A stretch of 45,222 nucleotides of DNA from Octopus sinensis (taxonomy: Eukaryota). The position numbers and the translations under genes are program-made. The notes beneath the pieces were generated by a model. The model was not told where the DNA came from. It did not search any database and was given only the letters and a program-made list of their open reading frames with translations. The DNA lies in contig NW_021834818.1 in the NCBI RefSeq assembly GCF_006345805.1, forward strand, positions 1 through 45,222. The letters run 5' to 3'. Shown piece after piece: positions 1,368 to 39,861 of this stretch (position 1 is its first letter; each line of letters begins with the position of its first letter).

Positions 1368-1474
1368 AGCTCTAGATACGTTTTCTGTGGTGTTTACATT
1401 TTCAGTTAACTTCTTAAAAGTCGAATATGCGTCCACGGTAAAAATCAGATGAAGTTCAAAGGAATGCGTCCAAC
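1368..1474 (-). CDS. Exon after the LU domain: (G)WTHSFELHLIFTVDAYSTFKKLTENVNTTENVSRA; domain unassigned, weakly SEA-like
   Basis: tttcttttatgttcttgaatag| ... |gtgagt; 107 bp, open in the phase-1 frame required by the upstream exon; two N-glycosylation sequons. Confidence 0.75.
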
Positions 1475-2166
1475 CTATTCAAGAACATAAAAGAAAAACC
1501 TAGACATTGCAATTATAAATGAGACACGTGCCACGGATGCACTGAGTGGCATATACTATGAACATAGAAATATATATTTAACAGTGTGTTGTTATATAAT
1601 CACGGGTTATTTAATACCCCGTATGAAACCAATTGCTAATATCAGTTGTAGTCGGTCTATAATACCGTATACTTTCATTAATATAGCCAGTCTACGGACA
1701 AATATGCAATTGCATAATTGTTTGGCTTATGGATTCTTACACGAGAGAGATGGATGAAAATATAGGATTATTTCAATATTATTTAAATATGATTCATATG
1801 CATATGTATATTTTCAGTGTGTGTTTACTTTTGTAACTGCCTTTGTGCGATGCGTTATACCCAGTTACCTTTAATATGTTCTGCCTAAGGTCTTGTATGG
1901 TTGAGAGAGTCACTGGCTAGATTTCACTTTTAGGCATAGGAGATTGGAGTGTAGGTAATATGCATATGCAGGGTTTACTCACGGATATGTGTGTATGTAT
2001 ATACAGAAGTTCAGCAAAAATTTAGATTCAAATGAATATGGTACTTAATTGGCTGATGAGTACTCAGCATTTTAAAACTGTTGTAATACTTACAACATTT
2101 AATAAAATGATGTAGTACGAAACGATCGTACCAAATTACCGGAGTCATTCTTGTTGCTTATTTTGA

Positions 2167-4764: not shown

Positions 4765-4808
4765 AAATAAATCAGATGCGATTAAACCAAAGAATTAACA
4801 ACACTTAC

Positions 4809-4992
4809 CAGGGAAATCATTCTTATTGCATAAGTTGTCTCTGCAACAAGCAACACAAGCAGTGCCATTGGACCAATTTTTGCATGTAAGGGAATTGTTT
4901 CTGAAAGCTTCAAGGCAGTTGTTGTATGTGCTGCAGGATCTTTGAAACTTCAATGTACTGCCATCCACTGATAGCCCATATTGGCAGAGAGG
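4809..4992 (-). CDS. LU/Ly6 domain, C-terminal exon: PLCQYG...CVACCRDNLCNKNDFP
   Basis: cttcattgttacag| ... |gtaagt; 184 bp, phase 0-1; CCxxxxCN signature. Confidence 0.92.
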
Positions 4993-5022
4993 CTGTAACA
5001 ATGAAGATAACAGCCATATAAT

Positions 5023-9453: not shown

Positions 9454-9545
9454 CAGTAGTCCTGGACAACTTCTCATTTGCGAATGATCGCAAATCATCC
9501 CTGAACATGTTTGACACTGCAAATTCTTTTGAAATAAAGTCTTTC
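9454..9545 (-). CDS. LU/Ly6 domain, N-terminal exon: KTLFQKNLQCQTCSGMICDHSQMRSCPGLL
   Basis: ttttatattctgtag| ... |gtaaaa; 92 bp, phase 1-0; LxCxxC start typical of LU domains. Confidence 0.88.
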
Positions 9546-9829
9546 CTACAGAATATAAAATAATATAGTGTTGGAATCAATGTATGTTAGATAAATAAAG
9601 GAAATAATCAATTATAACTATGCACGTCTTTTTTTTTAATTATCTTTGGGAAATGTTTCAGTTTTGTCACAAATTCAACTAAGAAAATCATGCAACCTAA
9701 TTGCTGTGTTGCTTCTATATCCCACTTTCACAAAGACCTGCAATTATCCAAAGAGGGAAATTACTCCAAGTTATGATTACGCTGCTATAGAGTTAGCTTC
9801 CGTTAAAACCTGGGAATATCTTTTAAATT

Positions 9830-11671: not shown

Positions 11672-11784
11672 CTTTATCTTTTGGCCCTGATTCAAAACAT
11701 AATTTGAGTAGCAGAGAATGACCTGAAGTTTTGTTATTGGTAAAAGTAAAAACAAACAACAGAAGTAAGGAAGAGTTTACTAAC

Positions 11785-11951
11785 CTTTACATTGTGAATA
11801 TTTCCTTATAGATATTAATTTATCTTTAGAGCCTAAATTTGTGTGACACTTGCCCTGAATTTTCACAGTTCTGTTGTATGTATTGTTTATATAATTTAAC
11901 ATAGCTGGAAGTTGACATCCACACATCATGTCTGTATTGTTTCTGAGGTCA
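11785..11951 (-). CDS. Last LRR plus LRR C-terminal cap (LRRCT) exon
   Basis: ttataattacag| DLRNNTDMMCGCQL...GKC...QCK |gttagt. Four-Cys CxC...C...C cap pattern; phase 2-1; overlaps ORF 11780..11968. Confidence 0.9.
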
Positions 11952-16534: not shown

Positions 16535-16535
<1 letters not shown>

Positions 16536-19500
16536 TATGTTTGACTTTTGCTTTATATTTGTACAAGTTGGCTCCAAGTCTCACCCAGAGACAACATGAT
16601 CAATGGTTTTATTTTGTCGTCGGCATACACGGCATGTTGGGCCACTGCCTTTCTTTAATATGTTGACCAGGTAGTTTCTTGTTAGTCGGCATTGATCTTG
16701 AGCTGCTATGATAAACCCTTCTGTTTCAGATTTTAAGCCAGAGGCCATTAGCCATTGATGGGTCAGGGCTTTGTCGATATCTGCATTATTCGCTCTCTTT
16801 GGGTATTTGCCATAGAGAGTTTTTTCATGCGCCTAGCTTTTTCTGTGCTTGTTTCTTGTATGTCTATCTCTAATTCCGAAATTTGTTGTATTCGGAATTC
16901 ACTTAGATATTCCTTTGCCTGTTTCGTTACTGAGTATGATGCTTTCTTGTTTTCATGTTTTGAGACAAGTTTTAACATCCAGTCCTCAGACTTTTTCAGG
17001 TAGGTGTCTAGGCCAATTGTAGCAATCTTCATTGTTATTGCCAGTTGTAAAAGACCACGGCCTCCCTCTTTTCTTGGCAGATAAAGTCGTTCTGTATCTA
17101 CCTTAGGGTGGTGCATTCTATGCATTGTCAACAGTTTTCGTATTTTTCTGTCGAGCTGACATATTTCAGTAATTGACTAGTTAACGATATTGAAACTGTA
17201 AGTCACGACTGGTATGGCTAATGCATTGATCGCTTCGATCCTGTTTCTTGCATTCAGCTCTGTCTTGAGTATTGCTCTCACTCTTCGATAACATTCTCTC
17301 CTGATCCTTTCCTTCATCTCTGAATGCCTTATTCCGTTCCCTTCAATTACCCCTAGGTACTTGTAGCTCTCCGCTGGGTCTAGTTCTTTTATGACATTCT
17401 GCTGGTCAAGGTTAACGTTAGATATTTCTGTCATTTTTCCTTTGATAAAGGTAGCTTTTGCACATTTATCGAGGCCGAATTGCATTCTGATGTCGTCACT
17501 GAATTGTTTGACTATCACTACTAAGCCCTTGAGTTGTTGGTCATTTTTTGCAAAAAGCTTTATATCATCCATGTAAATGAAATGATTTATATTTTTATCA
17601 AACATTTTATACCCGTACTGCGCGTCATTGAGCAGTTTTGAGATAGGTATTAAGGCTAAACAAAAGAGGAGTGGTGACAGTGAGTCACCCTGGAAAATGC
17701 CACATGAAATGTTTACATCACCAGCATTTAGGGATTCATTGTCACTGTTCAGAGTTAGTGTGGTTCTGCATGATCTCATACTTACAGTCAAAACGTTTCG
17801 CAGAGTAGGTGCTATCTTATACATTTCCAGGCATTTCCTAATCCAGCTATGTGGTAGGCTATCAAAAGCCTTTTTATAGTCCATCCAGGCTATTGATAAG
17901 TTTTTGTGTCGTTTGTGACAATCTTCTAAGATCATCTTATTGATGAGTAGTTGATCTTTACAGCCGTAGGATCCACGTTTTTACCTCCTTTCTATTCATT
18001 AGTGAATATGCTGCTGTCTGTTAAAAACTATAAGTATATTCCGTCAGGACAGATTTTAGCGTTTTATACATAGTTGTTAAGCAGGCTATGGGTCTATAGT
18101 TTTTTGGTTCATTTGTTTCTTTACTTTTTGGAAGCAGAAATGTTAACCCATTAACTAGCCAAGGAGGCATCCTACTAGGGTGTTGCAAAACATCATTGTA
18201 CAGTTCTGTTAGCAGTTCATGGCTCTCTGGGAAGGCATTCAGCCAGAAGTTAGGAATTTTATCCTTTCCTGGAGACTTCCATTTGCTTGACCTCCTGAGA
18301 GCAGATCTTATATCTTCTACCTTGACACCCTCCCACTTCTGCTCTTCTAAGGAGTCCAGTTCTGTAGATATTCTGTCAATCCAGGGGGCCTTTTCGTTGT
18401 GTATTTTTTCTTCTGCCCAAATTTTATTCCAAAATCCCTGCACTTCTTCTTTTGATGGTACAGACCTTACAGTAAACGCTGTTTTTCCTATCTTCCTGTA
18501 AAAATTCTTGGGGTTATTTTTGAACATGTTGTTGTCCTTGAAAAATCTAACACGCTTTTCATACCTCGCTATGCGGGCAGCTTTGGCAGATACCTTTTGT
18601 TTGATGGTTTCTATGGTGGCATCAATATCAAGTATAATTTTCATATTGTATTTTTTCAGTATTTTGGGGTTTTTTGTAGGTTTGGTAGTCTTGTGAACCG
18701 TAAGGTTTTTCAAATATTCAATGTCAGATCTAAATAGTTTAATTTGTTGTTGCAAACGCTCTTGCCAAGAAGGCTTTTTGTGGGAATGTTGCCGTTTTCT
18801 AATCTTTACACCACATAGGATCGTTGAGATTTTCGCGGATGCATAGTATAGGTGGTTGAGATTTGTGATAGCTGAAATTATATCCTTAAGTGCAAGCCGG
18901 ATTTTACCAATTATTTTCATGTTTTGGTTAGAGTTGCGGATTTTAGGGAGTGTATCACGTTCATCCATGCTGGTTGCTTTAATTTTCAGCCATTCAATCA
19001 TGAATTATCTATTTGATGTTCATCTGTCTTAGTGTTTATGATTGGTTCAGGGAGTGTTTCACTTTGCCTATCACTTATACTAACTCTTTCAATCCTTACT
19101 TCGTTTTTATCAGCCCTGGGCTGCTCTATAATTATTTCCTCTGTATTATCTTCTCTAGCTGCAGCTTCGTTCATTTTATCCGATATTGCTTGTCTAACTT
19201 GATCAATCTCTACTTCAGTCAGTGATTTTTTCTTTTATAATGTTTCTTCTGACGTTGGCAAGTTTGTTACTGTCTACGTAGGGTCCTACTTCAGGGTGTT
19301 TCTGTCTCCAGTTTATGTAGGTTTGTACAGTGTTAGATTTATCTGTGGGGAAATATATGGCATGGTAGAAGGCCGCAAGAACTTCTTTATTATCTTCCCT
19401 AGACCATTTTTCCTTCTTTTTCTTTTGATTATTTGGTGACGAGCATGGATGGCCATTTGTTGGAATATTGTGGGGTACGTCCAGCTCCTGTGTGTTGGGA

Positions 19501-19932
19501 AGATTTGATCCAGTAGCTGATTTTTCAATCAGAATTTGGTTCAATTTTCGGGTACGTGGTCTTTGTAATCCGCGCGATGACCAATGCGGTTTTTAGTTTG
19601 ATTTGTTGACATTGAAGCATGACGAGCTTCCACTCTTACATTAGGAGATGGATCTGTCAGTTTAGGGTTCTCTACACGTAAGCATTGCTCGTAGCGCAGC
19701 TTCTTATGGCTAGTAGATCTGTATTCGTCTGTATCTATTTTGTTGATAGTTTTATCTTCGAACATTTTTTCCTTCTCTTCCTTTTTTCCTCTCTCTTTCT
19801 TTCTTTCTCCTTCTTCCCCTTTTTCCTTCCTTCTCTTCCATTTCTCTTTTAAACTTATAAAAGGCTCACTCTGCCTGTATTAGTTCGAAATAATGAGAAT
19901 AAAATACGAAGGAAAAAAAGGAAAAAAAAGGG
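16535..19932 (-). mobile_element. Near full-length R4/Dong-like LINE, pseudogenised, endonuclease region deleted
   Basis: KSPGKDKIPNFW, NYRPIACL, DYKKAFDS, GIFQGDSLSPLLF, YMDD, YKYLG. After CRVC..TIDHVVSG the sequence jumps to the 3' UTR and (TAA)n. Confidence 0.92.
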
Positions 19933-20099
19933 ATTATTATTATTATTATCATTATTATTATGATGATTATTATTATTATTATTATTATTATCATTATTAT
20001 TATTATTACAATTATTATTGTTGTTGTTGTTATTGTTGTTGTTGTTGCTGTTGTTGTTACTGCTATTGGTTTTATTATTGTTATCATTATTATTATTAC

Positions 20100-20639: not shown

Positions 20640-21290
20640 AACAATTGGTCTTAAAGGAATGCATGAACTGCGGTAGAAACAATAAAAGCAACGATTTGCA
20701 CTTTCAGTTTCTGAGGCATACGACAGTGAAAGAATACTCATAATAAACATGGGGGAAAATTAATAGCGATATATTTTTCGCAAATACAGGGTATCAGTTT
20801 AGAGACAGTAAAGGAAAAATTAACAGTTGCTCTTCATGGATGATCTGAACCTTTTTAGCAAGAATAAAAAAAGATATTCTTTAAAACAAACTGTAAAACA
20901 CTTCAGCAAGTTTATAGATATAGGATTTTTCATGGATAAGTGTGCAGTATTAGTCATAAAACTGGACAAGTGGTCAGCAATAAAGTCTCCAATTACTAGA
21001 TGACAAGACTTTAAAATCACTGAAACAATGCGAGAGTTATCTGTACCTAGGTGTACTAGAATCTCACAATGTACTAACTATAGAAATTAAAACGGAACTG
21101 GAGAAGGCGTAAATAAGAAAGGTGAGGAAGCTAATGAAATCATAGTCAAATGGGACGTATCTAGTGAAGGCTGTAAATACATGGCCACTAACGTTACGTG
21201 TATTTACATGGATTAAGTTAGATCAAACCAACTGTCATGCAATTCAAAGCAGACTTTACAATGACTGAACACAATACTCGGAAATAATCA
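20640..21290 (+). mobile_element. Old R4-like RT remnant
   Basis: AYDSV, GYQFRDSKGKI..FMDDLNLF, YLYLGVLE motifs in broken frames. Confidence 0.55.
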
Positions 21291-21436: not shown

Positions 21437-21505
21437 ATCTCATTTATGCTGGAAAGGTATGAGAAAGCGCCATCAAATTTTTGTAAACGGTTGTAGCTCA
21501 AATTT
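21437..21505 (-). CDS. LRR exon (69 bp): NLSYNRLQKFDGAFSYLSSINEI
   Basis: tttgattctttcag| ... |gtatgt; phase 2-2; LxYNxL motif. Confidence 0.9.
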
Positions 21506-22549: not shown

Positions 22550-22685
22550 ATTATATAATATATATATATATTATATATATAATATATATATATATATAAA
22601 TATAATGTAGGATAACATTTTTTCGGGAAAAACATTTTATCAATGGCCAGCATATCAAAAATACCTTTAAAGGTTACGTTTATAA

Positions 22686-22950
22686 ATAATTTACAAGATA
22701 AGGGCAAAAGAAATATTTTGTAATGCCAAATATGCCGAAAAAAAGACAAAAATTGTCAATAACCATTATAATTTATGCGTCTCGAAACAAATCGATAGAA
22801 ATTTCAAAAAAATTCGTTATTACCGTATTGGTCCCAATTTCGGGGATAATTCATAAGAATTTTCACTTCATCAGCGATAAATTTTAGTCTTTTTGTCTTT
22901 CTTTCGGCATATTTGACATTAGAATTTTCCTTTGCCCTTATCTTGTAAAT

Positions 22951-23023: not shown

Positions 23024-23238
23024 ATATATATATAATATATATATATATACATATATATATGATACAAAAAAGAAAATGGAGAAACAAATTTAGTTTGTTA
23101 ATCAACTTTCATATATTAGAATGTTGGATCATATATTCATTTAACAAAATGAGAAACTTAATAGCATACATATATATATCTTATAATTCAGTACATATAA
23201 GAATACAAATTATAAAAATCATAATATATTATTGTCTA

Positions 23239-23282
<44 letters not shown>

Positions 23283-23415
23283 GTTTCTGTATATATCTGT
23301 GAACATGTGTATATATATTTGCATGACTATAGTGTATGACTATAAATTGTGTTGTGGTTGTGTATGTGTGTTCGTGTTTGTGTGTGAGTGTGTGTGTGTG
23401 TGTTTGTGTGTGTGA

Positions 23416-23462
<47 letters not shown>

Positions 23463-24166
23463 TCTGTATCTGTAAATCTGCCTCTCTGTCTGCTATTACA
23501 AAAATGTTATTGAGTGCAACGAAATTCAGTTTACAATTCAGATTCGTCATATTTTTATTTATGTACAGATATATGTGTGTGTATATAAGCATTGTATCTT
23601 TGTGTTTGCATCTATGTTACCAACCTTAAGTGTTGCTCCTGCTACATCTGTATATTGAAGGTTTTATCAATGTTAATAAAATAGAAACAATTGTAGGCTT
23701 TATACTGAGCAAACTAATAAACGCCACTGTCTCTATATTTATCGTTTCTTGTTAGAAAGTCTGTGTTTCTTTCCGAATTCTGCCATAGGATATTTCTATT
23801 TACTTATCATACAGGAGGAATTCACCTGGATGTGTATTCTACTTCTTATTACTGGTGCCTAATTGTCGAATATTGTTAGATCTGAATCTCTGGATTCCCC
23901 TCGTTGTCCTACATGGCTTTTCCCTGTATTTGGGAAAATTTGTCTTTAATTGTTAATTGTTACGTTGTTCACATTAATTTATATAAATCACATCACAAAC
24001 GTAAACGACAAACACTCATTTTCATACCCGCGCGCACACACACACACACACAGAGAAAAAGTGAGCGTCTGTTTGAGAGGATGAAAGAGAGAGCGAAGAT
24101 AGAAGGGAAGACAATATATATAGAAACATACAATTAGATTAATAATATCAAAAAGATCAAACTTAC

Positions 24167-24238
24167 ACCCTCTCTAAATTGGTGAGACCCTCGAACGATC
24201 CATGTTCAATAATCGCGATTTTATTATTGGCTAGATTT
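24167..24238 (-). CDS. LRR exon, array copy A (72 bp): NLANNKIAIIEHGSFEGLTNLERV
   Basis: ctctcccaaattacag| ... |gtaagt; open frame, phase 2-2. Confidence 0.9.
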
Positions 24239-25325
24239 CTGTAATTTGGGAGAGAATTGGTGAGAAATGGTATAAAAATGATTAGTCACACAATTTTAAA
24301 TACGCATATGTCTAATCAACTGGATGTAGATGTAGAAGAAAAGGAAGTAGAAGTGCAAAAATTAGATGAAGATGAAGATAATGAGGAGTGAAGGTTATGA
24401 TGATATTGATAATGATAACTTGTGACGCTATTGACTGATGAGGAAGATGATGCGAATGATGATGTCGTTTATGATGATGATGATGAGATGATAAGGAGTG
24501 TGGTGTTGAGGACGGTTAAGCACGTTGATGGTCGCGATCATGGCCATGATGCTTATGATGACAATGAAATTATAGAGGTACAAAAAACACAATTTGAAGC
24601 GGAGATTACAAGAAAATTATGAATTGAAATATGCATGTTTAAATCTGCCTCTCTGTCTGCAATTACAAAAATGTTATTGAGTGCAACGAAATTCAGTTTA
24701 CAATTCAGATTCGTCATATTTTTATTTATGTATAGATATATGTATGTGTATATAAGCATTGTATCTTTGCGTTTGCATATATATTACCAACCCAAACTGT
24801 TGCTCCCGCTACATCTGTATATTGAAGGTTTTATCAATGTTAATATAATAGAAACAATTGTAGGCTTTATACTGCGAAATCTAATAAACGCAACTGTCTC
24901 TATATTTATTGTTTGTTATCAAAATGTCTGAATTTTTCCGAATTCTGCCATAGGATATTTCTATTTACTTATCATACAGGAGGAATTCACCTGGATGTGT
25001 ATTCTACTTCTTATTACTGGTGCCAATATTGTTAGATTTGAATCTCTGGATCCCCTTGGTCGTCCTACATGGGATTTCCCCGTATTGGGGAATTTTGTCT
25101 TTAATCGTTAATTGTTACATTGTTCACATAAATTTTTTAAAATGACATCACAAACGTAAACCACAAACACTCAGATCCTTAATCATTTTCGTACCCGCAT
25201 GTACACACACACAGACAAAGTGAACGTTTGTTAGAGAGGATGAAACAGAGAGTGAATATAGACGGGCAGACTTTATATGTAGAAACATACAATTAGATTA
25301 ATAATATCAGGAAGATCAAACTTAC

Positions 25326-25397
25326 AACTTATATAGATTGGTGAGATCTTCGAACAATCCATGTTCAATAATCGCGATTTTATTATTGGCTAGTTTT
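25326..25397 (-). CDS. LRR exon, array copy B (72 bp): KLANNKIAIIEHGLFEDLTNLYKL
   Basis: aaattacag| ... |gtaagt; open frame, phase 2-2. Confidence 0.88.
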
Positions 25398-25814
25398 CTG
25401 TAATTTGAGAGACAATTGGTGAGAAATGGTATAAAAATGATTAGTCACACAATTTTAAATACGCATATGTCTAATCAACTGGATGTAGATGTAGAAGAAA
25501 AGGAAGTAGAAGTGCAAAAATTAGATGAAGGTGAAGATAATGAGGACTGAAGGTTATGATGATATTGATAATGATGGCTTGTGACGCAGTTGACTAATGG
25601 TGAAGATGATGCTAACGATGATATCGTTTATGGTGATGATAATGAGATGATAATGAATGTGGTGTTGAGCATGGTGATGACCGCGTTCATGGCCATGATG
25701 CTTATGACGACAATGAAATTATAGAGGTACAAAAAATAGAATTGGAAGCGGAGATTACAAGAAAATTATGGAGTAAAATATACATATATATATTGTGATG
25801 GATATATATATATA

Positions 25815-26232
25815 TGTCGGTCCCATAGGGGATAATGTTACAGTTGTTTATAGCTCCGGGATCATATCTCCGCTAACTGCCAAAACGACACAGCACTTGT
25901 GTCTTACTTGTATTTGCAAACTAATATCATGGTTCCCGTCTCTGGTTTTACGTAATAAACACAGGCCCTGATTTCTGGGTAGTAACTCGTCATCGAAACA
26001 CGGGTGTGTGTGTATCACGTTAGGCTAGAGATGGCAATGTTTTTTTCCTTTCACATATACTAATCAGACACAGACAGTGTGTCATTAGCCAATTGGAGAA
26101 GATGTTCTCCTGGGGCTATAAAAACTAGAAGCATCGTTCCCTATGGCACTGACACGTTTACGTGGTAAATATACTTTACGATTCCCTGCTACTACTGTTT
26201 ACGTCTCACTCACAGATTTAATATTGCTTTCA
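25815..26232. mobile_element. Candidate solo LTR in (TA)n, unit B
   Basis: ~418 bp, TG...CA termini, flanked by (TA)n, internal TATAAAA; no coding part. Confidence 0.4.
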
Positions 26233-26242
26233 TATATATATC

Positions 26243-26274
<32 letters not shown>

Positions 26275-27558
26275 AAGGGGCGGGCAACAGGTTGCTTAGC
26301 CACATAGCGAAAAATTAGAAATAGCAGACAAAAACTGTTTATTTCTGTTTTCTACTATCAGGGGGGAAGGGCATAAGTTTTGATAAAAAATACAAAAATC
26401 GATTTCAGGTGAGTATGCGATCGATAGAGCTGTGGGAACGTGCATTTGTAAAATCGTTTTTCTTGAAATAGAGTAAAGTCTATCTTTATTTCTTCTTTTG
26501 CTGGAGTCTGAAATTTGGGTTAAATCAGAGTTTCTGAAAGGGAAAGCCTATGAGACGGTCGCACAATATTTTTGAAAAACTTTGGTTTTAATATTTGACA
26601 CCTCAGCACCGTCCATGGGATGGGGGGCGTTGTGTATATATATATATAAATGTATGTATGTATATATACACATATATATACATATAATATATATACACTA
26701 TATATATATATATGTTTGTGACACATGTTTATTTACTATATATATGTATGTGAGACTGTGTATGACTACAAATTGTTTTGTGGTTGTGTGTTGTATATGT
26801 GTGCGTGTGGTGTGTGTGCCTCTCTGTGGGTGTGAGGGAGAGAGAGAGCGAGCGACTGAGAATCTGCATTTTAAATCTGCCTCTCTGTCTGCAATTACAA
26901 AAATGTTATTGAGTGCAACGAAATTCAGTTTACAATTCAGATTCGTCATATTTTTATTTATGTACAGATATATGTGTGTTGTATATAAGCATTGTATCTT
27001 TGTGTTTGCATCTATGTTACCAACCTTAAGTGTTGCTCCGGCTACATCTGTATCTAAAGGTTTTTTAAATATTAATATAATAGAAACAATTGTAGGCTTA
27101 TACTGAGCAAACTAATAAACGCAACTGTCTCTATATTTATCGTTTGTTGTCAAAATGTCTGAATTTTTCCGAATTCTGCCATAGGATATTTCTATTTACT
27201 TATCATACAGGAGGAATTCACCTGGATGTGTATTCTACTTCTTATTCTGGTGCCTAATTGTCGAATATAGTTAGATCTGAATCTCTGGATTCCCCTCGTT
27301 GTCCTACATGGCTTTTCCCTGTATTTGGGGAAATTTGTCTTTAATTGTTAATTGTTACGTTGTTCACATTAATTATATAAATCACATCACAAACGTAAAC
27401 GACAAACACTCATTTCATACCCGCACACACACACACATACACACCACCAGAAAAAGTGAGCGTCTGTTAGAGGGATGAAGAGAGAGCGAAGATAGAAGGG
27501 AAGACAATATATGTAAAACATACAATTAGATTAATAATATCAGGAAGATCAAACTTAC

Positions 27559-27629
27559 AACTTATATAGATTGGTGAGACCTTCAAACAATCCATGTGAA
27601 TAATCGCGATTTTATTATTGGCTAGATTT
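27559..27629 (-). pseudogene. LRR exon, array copy C (71 bp): 1-bp deletion causing a frameshift, or an assembly error
   Basis: Splice sites intact. Plus strand reads ccatgtgaataatc here versus ccatgttcaataatc in copies A/B. Confidence 0.75.
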
Positions 27630-28027
27630 CTGTAAGTTGGAAGAGAATTGGTGAGAAATGGTATAAAAATGATTAGTCACACAATTTTAAATACGCATAT
27701 GTCTAATCAACTGGATGTAGATGTAGAAGAAAAGGAAGTAGGAGTGCAAAAATTAGATGAAGTTGAAGATAATGAGAAGTGAAGATTATGATGATATTGA
27801 TAATGATGGCTTGTGACGCAGTTGACTGATGGTGAAGATGATGCTAATGCTGATGTCGTTTGTGATGATGAGATGATAATGAATGTGGTGTTGAGGACGG
27901 TGATGGTCGCGTTCATGGCCATGATGCTTATGACGAAAATGAAATTAAAGAGGTGCAAAAAAACAGAATTTGAAGCGGAGATAACAAGGAAAATTATGAA
28001 GTGAAAATATACATATATATATGTGAA

Positions 28028-28084
<57 letters not shown>

Positions 28085-28088
<4 letters not shown>

Positions 28089-28492
28089 GGTCCTTAGGGG
28101 ATAATGCTACTGTGTTTATAGCCGGGATGATATCTCCGCTAGCTGCCAAAACGACACACCACTTGTGTCTTACTTGTATTTGCGAACTAATATTATGGTT
28201 CTCGTCTCTGGTTTTACGTAATAAACACAGGCCCTGATTTCATGGTAGTAACTCGTCATCGAAACACGGGTGCGTGTGTATCACGTTAGGCTAGAGATGG
28301 CAATGTGTTTTTCTTTCACAAATATTAATCAGACACAGACAGTGTGTCATTAGCAAAGTGGAGAAGATGTCATCCTGGGGCTATAAAAACTAGAAGCATC
28401 GTTCCTATGGCACTGATACGTTTAGTGATAAATATACTTTACGATTCCCTGCTACTACTGTTTACGTCTCACTCACAGGTTTAATATTGCTT

Positions 28493-28496
<4 letters not shown>
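28085..28496. mobile_element. Candidate solo LTR in (TA)n, unit C
   Basis: TGT...ACA termini; paralogue of 25815-26232. Confidence 0.42.
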
Positions 28497-28526
<30 letters not shown>

Positions 28527-28969
28527 GGGGCGGGCAACAGGTTGCTTAGTCACATAGTGAAAAATTAGAAATAGCAGTCAAAAACTGTTTATTTCTGTTT
28601 TCTACTATCAGGAGGTGGGTATAAGTTTTGAAAAAATTACAAAGATCGATTTCAGGTGAGCTGTGCGATTCGATAGAGCTGTGCGAAAGTGCATTTGTAA
28701 AATCATTTTTCTTGGAATAGAAAAAAGTCTATCTTTATTCTTCTTTAGCTGGTGTCTGAAATTTGGGTTAAATCAGTGTTTCTCAAAGGGAGGGAGGCCG
28801 ATGGGACGTTCGGACAAGTTTTTTGAAAAACTTTGGTTTTAGTTTTTGACACCTCAGCACCGTCCATGGGATGAGGTGGCCTTGTATATATATATATATA
28901 TATGTAATATATATATATAATATATAATATATATTATATATAATATATATAATATATATTATTTATATA

Positions 28970-29027
<58 letters not shown>

Positions 29028-29176
29028 TATATTATATATAATATATATATATACACACATATGTATACATATATATAGATAAATATACATCTATATTATG
29101 TTTGTGACACATGTATATTTACATATATATATATGTATGTCAGCATGTGTATGACTACAAACTGCTTTGTGGTGTG

Positions 29177-29208
<32 letters not shown>

Positions 29209-29958
29209 CGAGAGAGAGAGAGTCTGCATGTTTAAATCTGCCTCTCTCTCTGCAATTACAAAAATGTTATTGAATGCAACAAAATTCAGTTTACAATTCA
29301 GATTCGTCATTTTTCATTTATGTATAGTTATATGTATGTGTATATAAGCATTGTATCTTTGCGTTTGCATCTATATTACCAACCCAAACTGTTGCTCCCG
29401 CTACATCTGTATACTAAAGGTTTTATCAATGTTAATAAAATAGAAACAATTGTAGGCTTTATACTGCGAAATCTAATAAACGCAACTGTCTCTATATTTA
29501 TCGTTTGTTGTCAAAATGTCTGAATTTTCCAGAATTCTGCCATAGGATATTTCAATTTACTTATCATACAGGAGGAATTCACTTGGGTGTGTATTCTACT
29601 TCTTATTACTGGTGCCTAATTGTCGAATATAGTTAGATCTGAATCTCTGGATTCCCCTCGTTGTCCTACATGACTTTCCCCGAATCGGGAATTTTGTCTT
29701 TAATTGTTAATTGTTACGTTGTTCACATTAATTTTATATAAATCACATCACAATTCAAAACCACAAACACTCATATTCTTAATTATTTTCATACCCGCCC
29801 GCGCGCACACACAACACACGCGCACACACACACGCGCATACACACAGACAAATTGAAAGTCTGATAGAGAGGATGAAAGAGAAAGCGAAGATAGAAGGGA
29901 AGACATTATATAGTAGAATATACAATTAGATTAATAATATCAGGAAGATCAAACTTAC

Positions 29959-30030
29959 AAATTGTATAATTTGGTGAGACCTACGAACGATCCATGTTCG
30001 ATGATCGCGATTTTATTATTGACTAGAATT
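29959..30030 (-). CDS. LRR exon, array copy D (72 bp): ILVNNKIAIIEHGSFVGLTKLYNL
   Basis: caacttacag| ... |gtaagt; open frame, phase 2-2. Confidence 0.88.
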
Positions 30031-30443
30031 CTGTAAGTTGAAAAAGTATGTGAGAAATGGTATAAAAATGATTAGTCACACAAATTTAAATACGCATATG
30101 TCTAATAAACTGCATGTAGATGTGGAAGAAAAGGAAGTCGGAGTGCAAAAATTAGATGAAATGAAGAGAAATGAGGAGTGAAGGTTATGATGATATTGAT
30201 AATGATGGCTTGTGACGCAGTTGACTGATGGTGACGATGATGCTAATGATGATGTCGTTTATGATGATGATGATGAGATGATAATGAGTGTGGTGTTGAG
30301 CACGTTGGTGGTCGCGTTCATGGCCATGATGCTTATGACGACAATGAAATATAAGAAGTACAAAATAGGATTGAAGCGGAGATTACAAGAAAAATATGAA
30401 GTGAAAAATACATATATATATTGTGAAGGATATATATAATATA

Positions 30444-30845
30444 TGTCGGTCCCATAGGGGATAATGCTACTGTGTTTATAGCTCCGGAATATCTCCGCTA
30501 GCTGTCAAAACGACACACACTTGTGCCTTACGTGTATTTGCGAACTAATATCATGGTTCCCGTCTCTGGTTTTACGTAATAAACCAAGGCCCTGATTTCT
30601 GGGTAGTTAACTCGTCATCGAAACCTGGGGGTGTGGTATCACGTCAGGCTAGAGATGGCAATGTTTTCCTTTCGCAATACTAATCAGACACAGACAGTGT
30701 GTCATTAGCCAAGTGGAGAAGAGATCTCCTGAGGCTATAAAAAGAAGAAGCATCCTTCACTATGGGACTGATACGTTACGTGTAAATATACTTTACGATT
30801 CGTGCCACTACTGTTTACGTTCTCACAGATTTAATATTGCTCTTA
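30444..30845. mobile_element. Candidate solo LTR in (TA)n, unit D (more diverged)
   Basis: Paralogue of the B/C copies with many small indels. Confidence 0.35.
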
Positions 30846-30850
30846 TATAT

Positions 30851-30907
<57 letters not shown>

Positions 30908-31292
30908 GAGAGCGAGAGAGAGAGAGAGAGATAGATATATAAAGGGGCAGGCACAGGTTGCTTAGCCACACATCCGAAAAATTAGAAATATCGGTCAAAA
31001 AACTGTTTATTTGTATTTTACTATCAGGGCATGCATAAGTTTTGAAAAAATTACAAAGATCGTTTCAGGTTTGTGTATGCGATCGATAAAGCCGTGGGAA
31101 CGTGCATTTGCAAAAATCGTTTTTCTTGGAATAGAAAAAAGTCTATCTTATTTCTTCTTTTGCTGGTTGTCTGAAATTTGGGTTAAATCAGTGTTTCTCA
31201 AAGGGGAGGCCTAGGGACGGTCGGACATGTTTTTGAAACACTTTGGTTTAATGTTTGACACCCCAGCACCGTCCATGGGAGGGGGGGGTTTG

Positions 31293-31325
<33 letters not shown>

Positions 31326-31327
<2 letters not shown>

Positions 31328-31500
31328 TACCGGAGTAAACACATAAATGTGAAACAAGGTGGAAAAAAGGTACTCAAATACCAGTGGTAGAGAGAATATG
31401 CTTTATTTAAAGCAGCAGAAAATTCAACAAACCTGTTACTCTGAGTTTCACGTTGCCGTTCTTCGGACAGTTTTTGCTAGAATAGAACCGATACGTCAAT
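31326..31500 (-). mobile_element. Possible Penelope-like terminal fragment
   Basis: Minus strand ctgtccgaagaacggcaacgtgaaactc resembles PLE terminal-repeat motifs; no coding evidence. Confidence 0.3.
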
Positions 31501-31614
31501 TCTATCCAGACTAGTATAAACGCTACACCTTTGAAAATTGACTTGTTTGATTGGTCCTTTACAAATAACTGTGAATTTTCGAGTGATAAACAAAAAGGAG
31601 CTCAAAAATATATA

Positions 31615-34297
31615 TATCACCCAGGCATGTTTGAAGACTGCCTAACAAAAATAGAAGAAGTCCTCACAAACCTTGAACAACACTTCATGGGTGACATTAA
31701 CTTCCCCAATGTGGAATGGCCTGGGGCGGGGCAGATGCTCCCAGTGATGACACACCATCAGCAGGCACAGGCAGAGTCCCTGCTCCATCTCACAAATGCC
31801 TCTTTCATGGAGCAAATAGCTCTGCAACCAACAAGGGCAGATAATATACTTCACAAACAATATGTATATTATCCATAATGTTAAAGTGATGCCGACAATG
31901 AGCTCGGATCACAACATAATAGAGCTGTCTATGTATGGACCAAAAGCCCCCGTAGACACACAGCCTATACGAAGCATCCACCATCTCTCCAACTTAAACT
32001 TTCATAAAGCAAACTGGAAGTTGATTGCGAAAGAGATCCTCAAACAGGATTGGCCTAAATGTCTCTCCACACTGGACATTAACATGAAGCACAAACACTT
32101 CATGTCCATAATACAAGCCATATGTGACAAATATGTCCCAGTGTACAGGGCCAGCACACACAAAAACAAAAACAGGATCCCTAGAGAAAGGAGGATTCTT
32201 ATGAGACGACGGACAATGATTGCGAACCGCCTGAGCAAGCACACCAAAGGTGGTGAGAAGTCTCGGCTCGAGAGAATGCTAATGGAAATTGAGAAAGTCT
32301 GCATCAATCTCATGAAAAGGAGAGAGCAGATAAAGAAGTTTGGGTAATAGAAAATATAAAATCAAACCCTAAAGCTTTCTTTACGTTTGCCAAAGAGACA
32401 GCCACAGTGCACCAGAGAATAGGACCTCTCTTCCAAAAAGATGGCTCTCTCACAGGAAACCCCACGAGGATAAGTGAAATACTGAACGAACATTTCCAAA
32501 GTGTGTTCACTACATCTCTAGGACACAGGCAAGTAAACAACCCAGAAGAATTCTTTGCCACTTTACCTGCGTCCAAAGAGGCAAAAATTGAGTACATCAA
32601 CATTGAAGATGATGATATCACACTAGCCATAGATGAGATTGACACAAACTCAGCTGCTGGACCTGATGGATTTCCAGCGATCCTTCTCAAATCGTGCAAA
32701 CGAGCCCTTGCAAAACCGCTACAGCTTCTTTTTCAGAGCTTCCTTGCAAGTGGTAAGCTCCCAGTCAAATTGAAAGAGGGTGTAGTATGCCCTATCCATA
32801 AGGGAGGTAGCAGAGCAGATGCTGAAAATTATAGGCCTTTCTCTCTGACCTCACACATCAGCAAAGTCATGGAACGAATAGTCCGCAAGAAACTAATCAT
32901 GTTCCTTGAAGAAAATGACTTGCTATCTGACACCCAGCATGGATTTCGGCCAGGCAGAAGCTGCTTAACAAAGCTCCTGCAACACTATGACTGGGTGTTA
33001 AAACAGCTACTAAATGGCTCAAATGTGGATGTAATATATCTCGACTTTGCAAAGGCCTTTGATAAAGTCGACCATGGTATGATCTGTCACAAACTGCGTG
33101 GTCACGGCATAGGCGGAAAACTTGGAGAGTGGCTGCACAACTTCCTAAAAGACAGAAGACAGGCAGTTGTGAGCAATGGAGCCACTTCCAAGGAAACACC
33201 AATAACAAGCGGTGTTCCACAGGGCACTGTCTTGGGGCCACTGCTGTTCATAGTGGCCCTTTCAGACATGCCTTCAGTTGCTACGATGGCCACCCTTGCT
33301 AGCTATGCAGATGACACAAAAATCTCCCACACAATACAAAACCCTGAAAATATTGCGCATCTGCAACAGGAGTTGGATAAAATATACAGGTAGGCGGAGG
33401 ACAACAACATGCAGTTTAATGCAGGTACGTTCCAGGCCTTGCGTTACCGTCACACAAAGGTAAACGACGTGCAGACTGGATACACTGGCCCAGGAAGAAT
33501 TGCAATCCCTGAGTCAAAATCAGTGCCTGACCTGGGCATTGACATGAGCAATGATGCATCTTTCCAAGTGCATATTACTAATCTGGTGATAAAATGCAAA
33601 TGGCCAGCTGGATGGATTCTCCGAACTTTCAGAACAAGAGAGAAGGAGACACTGATGGTCCTCTGGAAAACATTCGTCCTCAGCCGCTTGGACTACTGCT
33701 CCCAACTATGGTCACCACACAATATAAAACTAACAGCAGAACTTGAAGCAATTCAGAGAAGCTACAAAGAAGATTGTCTCAATGTAAAATATCAGCTACT
33801 GTGAAAGACTGAAAGTATTAAACCTCTTCTCCCTAGAGTGGAGGCGGGAGAGATATGCGGTGATATACACATCAGGAAAATCCTGGAGGGTCTTGTCCCA
33901 AACTTTGGCATTCAAAGTTACCCCAACCGCAGAACGGGGCGCCACTGCATGGTGCCAAAGATTCCAACATCACCATCAAAATACAGGTCCAGATACTGCA
34001 ACAGCTTGGGTTTTAGAGGACCACAGCTCTTTAACATCCTCCCTAAATGCCTAAGACACTTACATGGTGTGGATGTGGGTTTCTTTAAAACTAAACTGGA
34101 TCTCTTCTTGTCGGGAGTCCCAGATGAACCTACCACGACAGGAGACGCAGATGCGGGCAGCAGTATCGAACTCCCTTGTTGATCAAGTGCCACGTATCAG
34201 AGGTGGATTCACATATTAGTGTAGCTCATTCAGCGGTGGTGCCCCAGCATGGCCGCGGCCTTCGGGATAAAACATTTTTAAGGATTTTAAGGATTTT
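31615..34297 (+). mobile_element. 5'-truncated CR1/L2-group LINE (partial APE, RT, 3' short tandem tail)
   Basis: GDINFPNVEW, SDHNII, AAGPDG, NYRPFSLTS, YLDFAKAFDKVDH, GVPQGTVLGPLLF, YADD; ends in (ttttaagga)2; several stops and frameshifts. Confidence 0.92.
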
Positions 34298-35329: not shown

Positions 35330-36243
35330 TCAAAATTCAAAACTACAAAACAAACAAAATATACTCTATCCATATGCCACATTTATGTTTGACATTTTAA
35401 ATTTGGTTGCGTGCCTGCATAAGTTCATCAGCTCACTTCTTTGATTCAAAGAATTATTGTCTTTGAATAAAATATACAGTTTCTCTAACAGGCAAAGATT
35501 GCACTTAAAATTTTTTTCTTATGCGCTCCATGTCTGTATGGTACCGTTCTGTCCAGAATGCTCCATGTCACGTTGAAAGGTGGTGTTTCCTTTTCTTTTA
35601 GTTCCCAAACATATTTTGCTAGGCTGGTCCTCTTCCTATTTTCTGGGTATCTAAATGGATTTTTATGCGAATAAAATCGCGTTTTAAATGAATTTTCTGA
35701 AGCCCCTGTATAGGTCTAGTATTCCGATGAGCCTTCTATTTGTACCTTGGCTCTATAAACGATCCCTTTTACTAGACATTTCCCTCCCAACGGACAGGAG
35801 GATTCATTTTTGAAATTGCATTTCTTGAGGGGCTCGGCACCATGCTTAATATCAATCAGATTCCTATTATGCTGGCTAATATAAGAGGCGAAATTTCTGC
35901 AACAAGAATAGCTAACCTTAAGGGTTCTTTTATTAAATATTCTTTAGAATTTAAGGTCCAGCTTAAAATGCCTAGAGACTAATTTCAAAAATTCCTTACC
36001 TATATTAGTCTTTACGGCCAAATTGAAAGCCGGGTTGAACCACAAAACTTTCCTTCGCGCAGCATTATTACCAGCATTAAGCTGGTTGTACTGGATCTTC
36101 TCAGAGAATCCACCATTCCTTAATGCGCTATCGTAATACGGTGCAGTATTATGGAATGCTGCCTCATCCGAAGAAATTGAAGATATTCTTCTACCTACAT
36201 TGCTGACTAAGTTCCTAAGGATAACTGGCGGATAACTGCAATG
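35330..36243 (-). mobile_element. Penelope-like element remnant (RT thumb, linker, GIY-YIG endonuclease)
   Basis: SYPPVILRNL...YDSALRNGGF, RKVLWFNP...KTNIGKEFLKL, CN..CPLGGKCL..VYRA..YTG..FKTRFYSH..TSLAKYVW, CNLCLLEK. Confidence 0.8.
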
Positions 36244-36244
36244 G

Positions 36245-37530
36245 CAGGTGTCTACAACAAAGGGAAGAAGAACGAGATGGTTCTTTGCCCTGATAAAATG
36301 TGGGGGTCACGGCAATGTTGAGAAGGAACTCGAAAAAAATGTATTTGATAATAATTTGAGACCCGTAATTAGGCTAAATGCCGAAGATTCCACATCAAAA
36401 TCATCTAAGCACAGCAGGTTCCTGCTTGCACAGTACATCACAGACAGAATGAGTAACAAATGCGTTCTAATGAAATCCTAATTTTGTGTTAGTCAAATGC
36501 CACCTGTTGGCGCCTGCACTGAAGGAAGCCGGATTCGGTCCTGTTTCCAGAGGCTGGATCGCAGTAACCTACGACAAATTGTGCTTGTTGGAACCATTCA
36601 AATGAACTGGAACTAAGAAGACCTGGCGAACAGGCTATAAGCAGAGAGGTAGTGTGGTGGAGAATACAGAACAATTGAAGAGAGAGAGATAATACGATCA
36701 AACTCTCATCGAAGCCTTAAAATTCCATTTAAAATTACAGTGAGGGTGGAGTGAGAGAGAAATCTACACCACCCAAGTAAATGTAGTGAAAAGTGGGGGA
36801 ATACTAAACTGCACCTGTAAGCTGAGTCATACCGAGGACGATGGAGTACTTGTAGTCGTAGTCTTGACCTAACTTTCTTTACAACATCTGCCATAATGGC
36901 ATGGACGATCCTAAAATTACTTGAGTAGTTTATGACTGGGAGTTACATGAGTTTCAACTTCGTCAGTCAACAATATTGGCCTCAGAAGCGGTCAGAAGCG
37001 GTCACTTACTATCCGTCATCTAGAAGACAGTGGAAAACCTGGGGAAGGTGTTTAAATTTAACCGGAGTGACACATAATCTAATTGTGAAAGCAACAAGGA
37101 TTCTGAAAGGCGACTATCTACAGTGGCCATGTGATGTCTCCCAGTAATTTTAAGACCTGGAGTTAAAAATAGAGCATCCGCCATGGATCATTTGGCAGTT
37201 CTCCGTACATGACATTTCAATATCCTCATTGAAGAGAAGGAAGCGATTGCCTGTGAAAAAGGCTGAGCAACGTAGTCCTGAGCGGAAAATACAATTTAAA
37301 GCACTTCATAAGCAGCCTCAGAGAAAGCTTGGTTCTCTGTGATTAGATGTTGCTATTGCGAGGCTTTCGGTACGAGGGCAATACATCACGGAATTGGAGT
37401 GCGGTGGAGGATTTCCTGGCTTCACATGTATGTGATGAAAAACCTGATTTGGGTAGCACCACACCACCTCACTGTGACAAGTGGCCAGAAAGGTATAGGA
37501 AGTTACTGAAAAAGAAAGGTGTGTATGTCT
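36245..37530 (+). mobile_element. Scrambled Tx1-like ORF2 fragments
   Basis: HLLAPALKEAGFGPVSRGWIA matches 44530-44600; 36640-36800 matches 14640-14810. Confidence 0.55.
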
Positions 37531-39789: not shown

Positions 39790-39861
39790 AATTCACCTAA
39801 GTTTGGAAGATTTGCAAACGATCCATTTTCAATTTTCACGATTGCATTACTGGAAAGATCT
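39790..39861 (-). CDS. LRR exon (72 bp, phase 2-2): DLSSNAIVKIENGSFANLPNLGEL
   Basis: Acceptor ttatctttcag|, donor |gtaagt; 24-aa typical-class LRR. Confidence 0.92.

What the first reader, a model, noticed from the sequence alone, without database searches (positions are those of the whole stretch)
23280..31295. LRR number is growing by tandem duplication of one-exon units
Seen: each of the four units carries one LRR exon with its full intron context (branch-point-like TGACTAAT, acceptor, donor). All LRR exons are phase 2-2 and, except C, a multiple of 3, so gain, loss or skipping of a unit keeps the frame. Inference: the array can expand and contract by unequal crossover, giving alleles or isoforms with different solenoid lengths. 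This would be a germline route to variable LRR receptors, loosely analogous to plant LRR resistance genes and unlike somatic VLR assembly.
Basis: partly seen in the sequence, partly recalled or inferred. Interest (0 to 1): 0.8.

Follow-up and report, generated by a model that had tools for sequence, protein, structure and literature searches.

The report
Duplicated LRR exons in octopus receptor
Four tandem copies of a 1.2-2.4 kb intron-plus-exon unit, each carrying one 72-base leucine-rich-repeat exon, sit in the extracellular part of an octopus-specific adhesion GPCR gene; this is a real case of a known way of lengthening LRR domains, and there is no evidence yet that it produces variable receptors.

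Summary
The gene is on the minus strand. Window 23237-31329 holds four tandem units (A, B, C, D). Each carries one LRR exon with an AG acceptor, a GTAAGT donor, phase 2-2, and TGACTAATCA 48-50 nt upstream. A, B and D are 72 nt. C is 71 nt, and including it creates a stop codon.

The window is a whole Octopus sinensis contig. The gene encodes the ectodomain (LRR, LRRCT, three-finger-like domain) of a member of the octopus-specific adhesion GPCR expansion, whose members carry 3-14 LRRs.

- Units differ by 5-18%, more than the 4-6% sinensis/vulgaris divergence, so the duplications are old. "Has grown" fits better than "is growing".
- Patches of 0.7-2% divergence show exchange between units.
- O. 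vulgaris keeps only the D exon, after an out-of-register 4.3 kb deletion.
- A second O. sinensis contig is identical across the array, so no polymorphism is seen.
- Type II exons diverge about as fast as their introns.

An upstream family of LRR exons (eight copies in O. vulgaris, in 6-16 kb units) is more interesting. Those exons are 2.6 times more divergent than their introns, mostly at concave-face codons.

One-LRR, 72-nt, phase-2 exon arrays are already known from brown-algal ROCO genes and gonadotropin receptors. I file this as a new member of a known kind, of moderate interest.

The parts
29231..31329 (-). Unit D: 'extra' segment plus core, the first array unit in gene order. It has an orthologue in O. 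vulgaris.
   Evidence: It is collinear with L001 98195-95141 at 93.8%.
29959..30030 (-). LRR exon D, 72 nt, phase 2-2, encoding ILVNNKIAIIEHGSFVGLTKLYN. It is intact but was not used in the RefSeq model.
   Evidence: The O. vulgaris orthologue at L001 97155-97226 differs at 4 of 72 nt.
26870..29230 (-). Unit C: 'extra' segment plus core.
   Evidence: Its 'extra' segment is 2-6% from the O. vulgaris remnant unit.
27559..27629 (-). LRR exon C, 71 nt. It is frameshifted but its splice sites are intact. Including it gives a stop at the junction with the next exon.
24638..26869 (-). Unit B: 'extra' segment plus core.
25326..25397 (-). LRR exon B, 72 nt, phase 2-2, encoding KLANNKIAIIEHGLFEDLTNLYK. 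It is used in RefSeq model P0008.
23237..24637 (-). Unit A: core plus microsatellite junction, without the 'extra' segment. It is the last array unit in gene order.
24167..24238 (-). LRR exon A, 72 nt, phase 2-2, encoding NLANNKIAIIEHGSFEGLTNLER. It is used in RefSeq model P0008.
39790..39861 (-). Upstream 'type I' LRR exon, 72 nt, phase 2-2, encoding DLSSNAIVKIENGSFANLPNLGE. It belongs to a second, larger array of 6-16 kb units, with eight copies in O. vulgaris.
21437..21505 (-). Last LRR exon before LRRCT, 69 nt, phase 2-2, encoding NLSYNRLQKFDGAFSYLSSINE. It corresponds to the last LRR that ends with the shared DGAF-x-x-L core (mostly YEDGAFLFLPS) in every family member listed. RefSeq model P0008 skips it.
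11783..11951 (-). LRRCT exon (DLRNNTDMMCGCQLPAML...). Its phase-2 acceptor is in frame with every LRR exon.
9454..9546 (-). First exon of the Ly6/uPAR-like (three-finger) domain.
   Evidence: The domain profile hits LYPD chain 6zss_A at E=0.002.
4807..4995 (-). Second exon of the Ly6/uPAR-like domain, ending in CCRDNLCNKN.
1368..1475 (-). Next coding exon of model P0008. The gene then runs off the contig towards its GAIN/GPS and 7TM parts.

Best explanation
The region is part of the 5' half of an Octopus sinensis adhesion GPCR gene on the minus strand. The deduced domain order is LRRNT, LRR(n), LRRCT, a Ly6/uPAR-like domain, then GAIN/GPS and 7TM. The GPS and 7TM parts lie outside the window.

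In this gene family each LRR is encoded by its own 72-nt exon flanked by phase-2 introns. Any whole exon-plus-intron block can therefore be duplicated, deleted or skipped without changing the reading frame.

The four units arose by segmental tandem duplication of such a block. The unit boundaries lie in compound (TA)n/(TG)n/(GA)n microsatellites. I infer, but have not shown, that misalignment between these tracts started the duplication.

The duplications happened before O. sinensis and O. vulgaris separated. Since then the units have exchanged sequence by gene conversion or unequal crossover. One exon (C) has died by a frameshift. O. vulgaris has lost exons A, B and C through a 4.3 kb deletion. 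This is birth-and-death turnover of LRR modules.

The functional consequence is inferred, not shown: a different number and surface of LRRs in the ligand-binding solenoid of a receptor whose family is expressed in axial nerve cord, suckers and skin. For these four type II exons the sequence data do not show selection either way.

The upstream type I exon family behaves differently. Its excess divergence at concave-face codons suggests selection for new binding surfaces.
For: Identity of the window:
- It is O. sinensis contig VCDQ01005335.1 and carries RefSeq protein P0008.
- P0008 joins the type I exon, B and A to the LRRCT exon and the Cys-rich exons.

Identity of the gene:
- In O. vulgaris the orthologous LRRCT exon starts a gene model whose product has GPS and 7tm_2.
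- Full-length relatives that are 45-50% identical across LRR, LRRCT and the Cys-rich domain have LRR_8, GPS and 7tm_2. One also has a Death domain. This matches 'group 3' of Ritschard et al. 2019 (PMC6408891).
- The Cys-rich domain profile hits a Ly6/PLAUR protein at E=0.002.

Exon structure:
- An O. bimaculoides paralogue also has 72-nt phase-2 one-LRR exons before its LRRCT exon.

Unit history:
- Orthology of D, of the C 'extra' segment and of A's 3' core with O. vulgaris, and the absence of window 23880-28190 there, are.

Type I exons:
- Pairwise diversity is 0.162 in the exon, against a mean of 0.067 and a maximum of 0.140 in 23 flanking 72-nt windows.
- Concave-face codons have diversity 0.32, against 0.061 for structural codons.
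- 11 of 36 site pairs fail the four-gamete test.
Against: - No transcript evidence was reachable, so which of D, C, B and A are spliced in is unknown.
- The only annotation, P0008, skips the intact D exon and the family-conserved last LRR exon. It may simply be a poor model.
- Type II exons are as divergent as their introns. The whole ectodomain has dN/dS of about 0.83 between the two species. Both fit relaxed constraint or even a decaying gene.
- Exon C has intact splice sites yet breaks the frame. This is awkward if the array is spliced constitutively.
- The GPS/7TM part of this particular gene is outside the window and was not read.
- The direction of change was inferred from divergence ratios, not from an outgroup genome.
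Confidence: 0.75

Rival explanations
1. The type II copies are dispensable or dying pseudo-exons. After duplication, A, B and C added nothing that selection keeps. They drift, one is already frameshifted, the sister species deleted three of them, and the receptor works with D plus the last LRR alone.
For: - Exon divergence is equal to or greater than intron divergence for all type II pairs. Nine of the ten pairs are not significant, and only A-C reaches a nominal p=0.04 with no multiple-test correction.
- Among type II exons pN/pS is about 0.65.
- Exon C is frameshifted, and including it gives a stop.
- O. vulgaris lacks A, B and C.
- Between the two species dN/dS is 0.83.
Against: - A, B and D keep a 72-nt open frame, every LRR structural residue (L, N, I, F) and consensus splice sites, despite 11-17% divergence.
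- The RefSeq model includes B and A.
- The differences among them fall mainly at LRR positions 2, 3 and 5, the pattern seen in the clearly diversifying type I exons.
Confidence: 0.3
2. The array is a cassette set for alternative splicing. Because every exon is 72 nt and phase 2-2, different subsets are spliced in, giving receptor isoforms with different LRR number and surface.
For: - All the exons are frame-compatible with each other and with the LRRCT exon.
- Both available gene models skip intact exons. P0008 skips D and the last LRR. P0001 uses 5 of the 8 type I exons.
- Exon C can only be tolerated if it is skipped.
- Brown-algal ROCO genes with the same exon design do show such splicing (PMC11378527).
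Against: - There are no transcript data.
- Exon skipping in gene predictions across 100 kb of repeats is a common annotation error.
- The last LRR skipped by P0008 corresponds to the last LRR present in every family member listed, so that skip at least looks like an error.
Confidence: 0.15
3. The array is an assembly artefact, in which one unit was expanded by misassembly.
For: - The contig is a small unplaced piece of 45 kb, rich in microsatellites.
- The second contig is identical across the array and could be a redundant copy of the same reads.
Against: - Units differ from each other by 5-18%, with distinct indels and one unit lacking 1.1 kb. Artefactual copies would be near-identical.
- O. 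vulgaris independently carries orthologues of D, of the C 'extra' segment and of A's 3' core in the same order.
Confidence: 0.03

Closest known systems
Octopus-specific adhesion GPCR expansion ('group 3' of Ritschard et al. 2019, PMC6408891)
   Same: The family has GPS plus an adhesion-type 7TM, with LRRs at the N-terminus of some members and a Death domain in one. Its genes are co-localised and positive selection has been reported. Relatives of the window's protein show exactly these domains, and the O. vulgaris orthologue continues into GPS/7tm_2.
   Different: In the passages I read, the paper does not describe one-LRR exon arrays, multi-kb tandem exon units or LRR-number turnover. Membership of this particular gene in their group 3 is inferred from domain content, not from their gene list.
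Brown-algal LRR-ROCO genes (Zambounis et al. 2012; Teng et al. 2024, PMC11378527)
   Same: Each LRR is encoded by a separate 72-bp exon in phase 2. Exons are duplicated or shuffled in tandem. Diversifying selection falls on concave-face positions. Alternative splicing of LRR exons is reported, and the authors propose a germline route to diverse receptors.
   Different: Those are cytoplasmic LRR-ROC-COR GTPases in stramenopiles. This gene is an extracellular LRRNT/LRRCT-capped domain of an animal adhesion GPCR. The units here are 1.2-16 kb long and include transposon fragments. The origin is independent.
Glycoprotein-hormone receptor / LGR LRR exons (Koo et al. 1991, as cited in PMC11378527)
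   Same: These are animal GPCR ectodomains with one LRR per similar-sized exon and all introns in phase 2. They are the classic case for growth of an LRR domain by exon duplication.
   Different: They are class A GPCRs with ancient, fixed exon numbers and no recognisable intron homology between units. Here the intron homology is still 80-98% and the copy number differs between sister species.
Tetrahymena 90-bp-exon LRR gene arrays (Xiong et al. 2019, PMC6564038)
   Same: They are tandem intragenic exon-plus-intron repeat units detectable at the DNA level, with an extreme phase-2 bias. The paper proposes clonal expansion by unequal crossing-over, and LINE-like elements lie nearby.
   Different: Those exons are 90 bp rather than 72 bp, the organism is a ciliate, thousands of genes are involved, and the introns are very short.
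Lamprey VLR and plant NLR/RLP LRR diversification
   Same: Variation is concentrated on LRR concave-face positions, and the number of LRR modules is variable. This comparison rests on my own knowledge.
   Different: VLRs are assembled somatically from flanking cassettes by gene-conversion-like copying, and nothing here suggests somatic change. Plant R-gene LRRs mostly vary within large exons and by whole-gene unequal crossover.

Membership tests
Adhesion GPCR (class B2) | GAIN/GPS autoproteolysis motif next to a secretin-like 7TM domain | tested here: inconclusive
   These parts are not in the window, because the contig ends after the exon at 1368-1475. The O. vulgaris gene model that starts at the orthologous LRRCT exon has precomputed GPS and 7tm_2 hits. 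Relatives that are 45-50% identical over the window's ectodomain have GPS plus 7tm_2 above the Pfam cut-offs.
Adhesion GPCR (class B2) | Long N-terminal ectodomain with adhesion-type modules | tested here: met
   P0008 matches LRR_8 at E=3.5e-21. The LRRCT Cys pattern is present. The Ly6/uPAR-like domain profile hits 6zss_A at E=0.002.
Extracellular LRR domain with one LRR per exon | 24-residue LxxLxLxxNxIxxI repeat, one per exon | tested here: met
   Exons A, B and D each encode xLxNNKIAIIEHGxFxxLTxLxx, and the junction codon supplies the L/V at LRR position 4. The family shows a strict 24-residue period.
Extracellular LRR domain with one LRR per exon | Symmetric intron phase (2-2) and exon length a multiple of 3 | tested here: met
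   The type I exon, D, B and A are 72 nt and the last LRR exon is 69 nt. All are phase 2-2, and the LRRCT acceptor is phase 2. Exon C, at 71 nt, fails this test.
Tandem exon-unit duplication (intragenic segmental duplication) | Homology extends through the flanking introns, head to tail | tested here: met
   The four units align over 1.2-2.3 kb at 78-98% identity in well-aligned blocks.
Tandem exon-unit duplication (intragenic segmental duplication) | Duplicated exons are included in mature mRNA | not testable with these tools
   No RNA data were reachable. RefSeq model P0008 includes B and A only.
   The only second O. sinensis sequence, L003, has zero differences between window 20137 and 33323. 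It may not be an independent haplotype. A difference is seen only between species.
Diversifying-selection LRR receptors (ROCO-like or VLR-like pattern) | Excess change at concave-face codons relative to neutral sites | tested here: inconclusive
   The feature is met for the upstream type I exons. Exon diversity is 0.162 against 0.067 for intron. Concave-face codons have diversity 0.32 against 0.061 for structural codons, Fisher p=0.01. It is not shown for the four type II exons of the finding. The numbers are small and the copies are not independent.
Ly6/uPAR (three-finger) domain | Ten-cysteine pattern ending in CCxxxxCN, with a three-finger fold | tested here: inconclusive
   The Cys pattern is invariant in 9 relatives. 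The profile hits LYPD chain 6zss_A over the full length at E=0.002, followed by activin-receptor ectodomains. Pfam gives no call. The AF2 model is unusable, with pLDDT 36.

The most novel reading that the evidence does not exclude
This octopus-specific adhesion GPCR family may use long arrays of interchangeable 72-nt phase-2 LRR exons as a diversity generator. There are at least 8 type I plus up to 4 type II exons in this gene, spread over about 100 kb. On this reading, diversifying selection and short-tract conversion reshape the concave-face residues of each cassette. Cassette gain, loss and alternative inclusion would then give receptors with different LRR number and surface in suckers, skin and the arm nerve cord. 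It would be a germline and splicing-based counterpart to protocadherin or Dscam-type diversity, or a recognition repertoire.
Probability: 0.12. Interest if true: 0.8.

Novelty: new member of a known kind. Interest (0 to 1): 0.4.

Why it matters
The locus shows, at base-pair resolution, how the ligand-binding solenoid of a lineage-specific octopus receptor family changes length. Whole exon-plus-intron blocks are copied, exchanged, disabled and deleted within the divergence time of two sister species.

If the cassettes are expressed, and especially if they are alternatively spliced, this family would offer a tractable example of rapid ectodomain diversification. The family is already linked by others to suckers, skin and the axial nerve cord.

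If the cassettes are not expressed, the locus is an ordinary case of exon birth and death.

The locus also exposes annotation errors. The gene is split in two in O. vulgaris, and the RefSeq model in O. sinensis skips a conserved exon.

Tried and rejected
- A plus-strand reading of the LRR exons. The motif scan found them only on the minus strand.
- Further hidden exon copies. Low-stringency blastn with exon plus or minus 60 nt found none beyond the type I exon, D, C, B, A and the last LRR exon in the window, and none beyond 8 type I, 1 type II and the last LRR exon in O. vulgaris.
- The 1.1 kb 'extra' segment as a dispersed transposon. It has no copies outside the array in the 45 kb window or in the 117 kb O. 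vulgaris locus.
- An intronic RNA gene as the reason for unit conservation. Rfam and tRNA scans found nothing.
- A structure prediction of P0008 to test the three-finger domain and map variable sites. With only four sequences the model had pLDDT 36 and was discarded.
- Pfam on the Cys-rich domain gave no hit. A profile search against PDB sequences gave only a modest Ly6/PLAUR hit.
- Finding the O. bimaculoides orthologue as an outgroup. Only paralogues at 55-62% identity were returned.
- A rescue of exon C by another donor. A GT four bases downstream would make a 75-nt in-frame exon. It is a weak site next to a consensus GTAAGT, and the encoded peptide is no longer LRR-like, so I rejected it as unlikely.


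Full report
**What is in the sequence.**

The window is AT-rich, full of microsatellites and LINE fragments, and clearly eukaryotic. Between 23237 and 31329 there are four head-to-tail units:
- A: 23237/23471-24637. It has only a ~1.17 kb core.
- B: 24638-26869.
- C: 26870-29230.
- D: 29231-31329.

B, C and D each have the core plus a ~1.1 kb 'extra' segment. Each unit boundary lies in a compound (TA)n/(TG)n/(GA)n microsatellite.

The LRR exons are on the minus strand:
- D: 29959-30030, 72 nt.
- C: 27559-27629, 71 nt.
- B: 25326-25397, 72 nt.
- A: 24167-24238, 72 nt.

Each exon follows ...ttacag and is followed by GTAAGT. One base completes the previous codon and two bases begin the next, which is phase 2-2. 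That junction codon supplies the L or V at LRR position 4.

TGACTAATCA sits 48-50 nt upstream of each acceptor. Two further phase 2-2 LRR exons flank the array: 39790-39861 (72 nt, 'type I') and 21437-21505 (69 nt).

**Which gene this is.**

The window is the whole of Octopus sinensis contig VCDQ01005335.1. RefSeq protein P0008 ('egg-6-like, partial') is encoded on it. That model joins, in order:
- the type I exon, B and A;
- an LRRCT exon (11783-11951);
- two exons of a ten-cysteine domain ending in CCxxxxCN (9454-9546 and 4807-4995);
- one more exon (1368-1475).

A profile of the cysteine-rich domain hits a Ly6/PLAUR protein over its full length at E=0.002. Pfam does not call the domain, and the structure model was unusable.

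The orthologous O. vulgaris locus, L001, is 92-97% identical in DNA and shares transposon insertions with the window. It is annotated there as two genes:
- an LRR-only model, P0001, spanning 97 kb;
- a model beginning at the LRRCT exon whose 899-residue product has GPS and 7tm_2.

Relatives that are 45-50% identical across LRR, LRRCT and the Cys-rich domain are full adhesion GPCRs with LRR_8, GPS and 7tm_2. One also has a Death domain. This matches the octopus-specific adhesion GPCR expansion described by Ritschard et al. 2019. In that family, 5 of 22 members have LRRs, one has a Death domain, the genes are co-localised, positive selection is reported, and expression is in axial nerve cord, suckers and skin (PMC6408891).

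Family members have 3 to 14 LRRs at a strict 24-residue period. Several contain near-identical neighbouring repeats. An O. bimaculoides paralogue has the same 72-nt phase-2 one-LRR exons.

**History of the array.**

Windowed divergence between units is a mosaic:
- Typical values are 10-18%.
- A and C differ by only 0.7-2% in three stretches.
- B and D differ by 3-5% in the 3' core.

Orthologous divergence between O. sinensis and O. vulgaris is 2-6%. O. vulgaris has an intact orthologue of unit D and a remnant unit. The remnant's 'extra' segment is 2-6% from C's, and its 3' core is closest to A's. The sequence corresponding to window 23880-28190, which holds exons A, B and C, is absent. A 5.4 kb insert with a mariner-like fragment is present instead.

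A is closer to its O. vulgaris counterpart than to B, and the same holds for C's 'extra' segment. The four units therefore predate the species split. The copy-number difference between the species is a loss in O. vulgaris, by a deletion whose ends are not at homologous unit positions. The near-identical patches show that sequence exchange between units continued afterwards.

A second O. sinensis contig, L003, is 99.8% identical overall and has no differences at all between window 20137 and 33323. No allelic copy-number variation is visible.

**Are the exons used?**

A, B and D keep open 72-nt frames, all LRR structural residues and consensus splice sites. Any combination of the type I exon, D, B, A and the last LRR exon reads in frame into LRRCT. 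Including C gives a stop at its junction with the next exon.

Type II exon divergence is not lower than flanking intron divergence. Nine of the ten pairs are not significant; only A-C reaches a nominal p=0.04, with no multiple-test correction. Among type II exons pN/pS is about 0.65. Over 255 orthologous codons of the ectodomain dN/dS is 0.83. These figures fit either relaxed constraint or a mixture of purifying and positive selection.

P0008 omits D and also the last LRR exon. That exon corresponds to the last LRR present in every family member listed, so the model is probably imperfect. No transcript data were reachable.

**A stronger signal next door.**

In O. vulgaris the type I exon occurs eight times, all intact, in tandem units of 6-16 kb that are 92-97% identical over 3-9 kb. 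The nine type I exons, counting the window's, behave as follows:
- They differ by 16% on average, while their flanks differ by 6%.
- The exon is the diversity maximum among 23 non-overlapping flanking 72-nt windows, which have a mean of 0.067 and a maximum of 0.140.
- Diversity is 0.32 at codons for LRR positions 2, 3, 5, 7, 8 and 10, which form the concave face. It is 0.061 at structural codons.
- 11 of 36 informative site pairs fail the four-gamete test.

This is the pattern expected for diversifying selection, with short-tract exchange between cassettes. The sample is small and the copies are not independent.

**Comparison with what is known.**

- One LRR per 72-bp phase-2 exon, tandem exon duplication, concave-face positive selection and alternative splicing are all described for brown-algal ROCO genes (PMC11378527).
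- Phase-2 one-LRR exons are classic in gonadotropin receptors (cited in the same paper).
- Tandem exon-plus-intron LRR units are described in Tetrahymena (PMC6564038).

The mechanism is therefore known, and so is the receptor family. The following may not yet be described, as far as my searches show:
- the occurrence of such arrays in an animal adhesion GPCR;
- the multi-kb unit size;
- the turnover between sister species;
- the excess of exon over intron divergence in type I.

**Verdict.**

The array did arise by tandem duplication of one-exon units, and its units do exchange sequence. However, the expansion is old. The only change dated since the split is a loss by an out-of-register deletion. 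One copy is dead, no polymorphism is seen, and expression is untested.

I rate this a new member of a known kind, with interest about 0.4.

Noticed in passing
L001 15682-87341 (O. vulgaris) and window 36237-43775: A second, larger array of eight intact 'type I' LRR exons (..NNAI.KIENG..ANLP.L..) sits in 6-16 kb tandem units that are 92-97% identical. The exons are 2.6 times more divergent than their flanks, mostly at concave-face codons. An RT-like ORF fragment (NIRQNVIKELEPAERYMYLSVFE) lies about 470 bp downstream of five of the eight exons (15682, 23030, 34569, 57627, 87270). This suggests, but does not show, that the insertion predates those duplications; the other three units were not checked.
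   Followed up: partly
window 1117-45222 = L003 (VCDQ01010816.1): A second O. sinensis contig duplicates almost the whole window at 99.8% identity. All differences cluster at 6.6-20.1 kb and 33.3-44.2 kb, and there are none across the array. It is either a haplotig or redundant assembly.
   Followed up: partly
window 21437-21505; L001 10001-107623 and 109392 onward: There are likely annotation problems. The O. sinensis RefSeq model skips the last LRR exon, which corresponds to the last LRR found in all family members listed, and also skips the intact exon D. The O. vulgaris annotation splits the gene into an LRR-only model with a short hydrophobic tail exon (equivalent to window ~20640-20725) and a GPS/7tm_2 model that starts inside the LRRCT exon.
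   Followed up: partly
window 12021-19933: About 7.9 kb of LINE-type sequence (RVT_1 at 17177-17935, zf-RVT at 15471-16160, a 557-aa ORF at 12608-14281, and long (ATT)n tracts) is present here. The O. vulgaris orthologous interval is only about 0.9 kb, so this is a species-specific intron insertion.
   Followed up: partly
window 31531-34200 and 41580-45222: Two more non-LTR retrotransposon copies lie on the + strand, antisense to the gene. The first has RVT_1 at 32407-33393. The second has zf-CCHC at 41580-42092 and an endonuclease at 42780-43286. The first is shared with O. vulgaris.
   Followed up: partly
window 22640-22950: An inverted-repeat element of about 300 bp, MITE-like, is bracketed by long (TA)n tracts just downstream of the array in gene order.
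   Followed up: no
window 11321-11667, 807-1296 and 11070-11493: A SINE-like repeat of about 174 bp occurs as two tandem copies at 11321-11667. Further copies are elsewhere in the window and in L001 (109626-110215 and 116141-116528).
   Followed up: no
window 27555-27629: A GT four bases beyond exon C's consensus donor would give a 75-nt exon that restores the downstream frame. The donor is weak and the second half of the peptide is no longer LRR-like.
   Followed up: partly
L001 98195-103635: O. vulgaris has a 5.4 kb insert between its two type II units. The insert is absent from the window, is internally repeated, and contains a mariner-like HTH fragment.
   Followed up: partly
window exons against L001 exons, 255 codons: The ectodomain evolves nearly neutrally between O. 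sinensis and O. vulgaris (dN 0.055, dS 0.066, ratio 0.83). All cysteines and LRR structural residues are nevertheless kept.
   Followed up: yes
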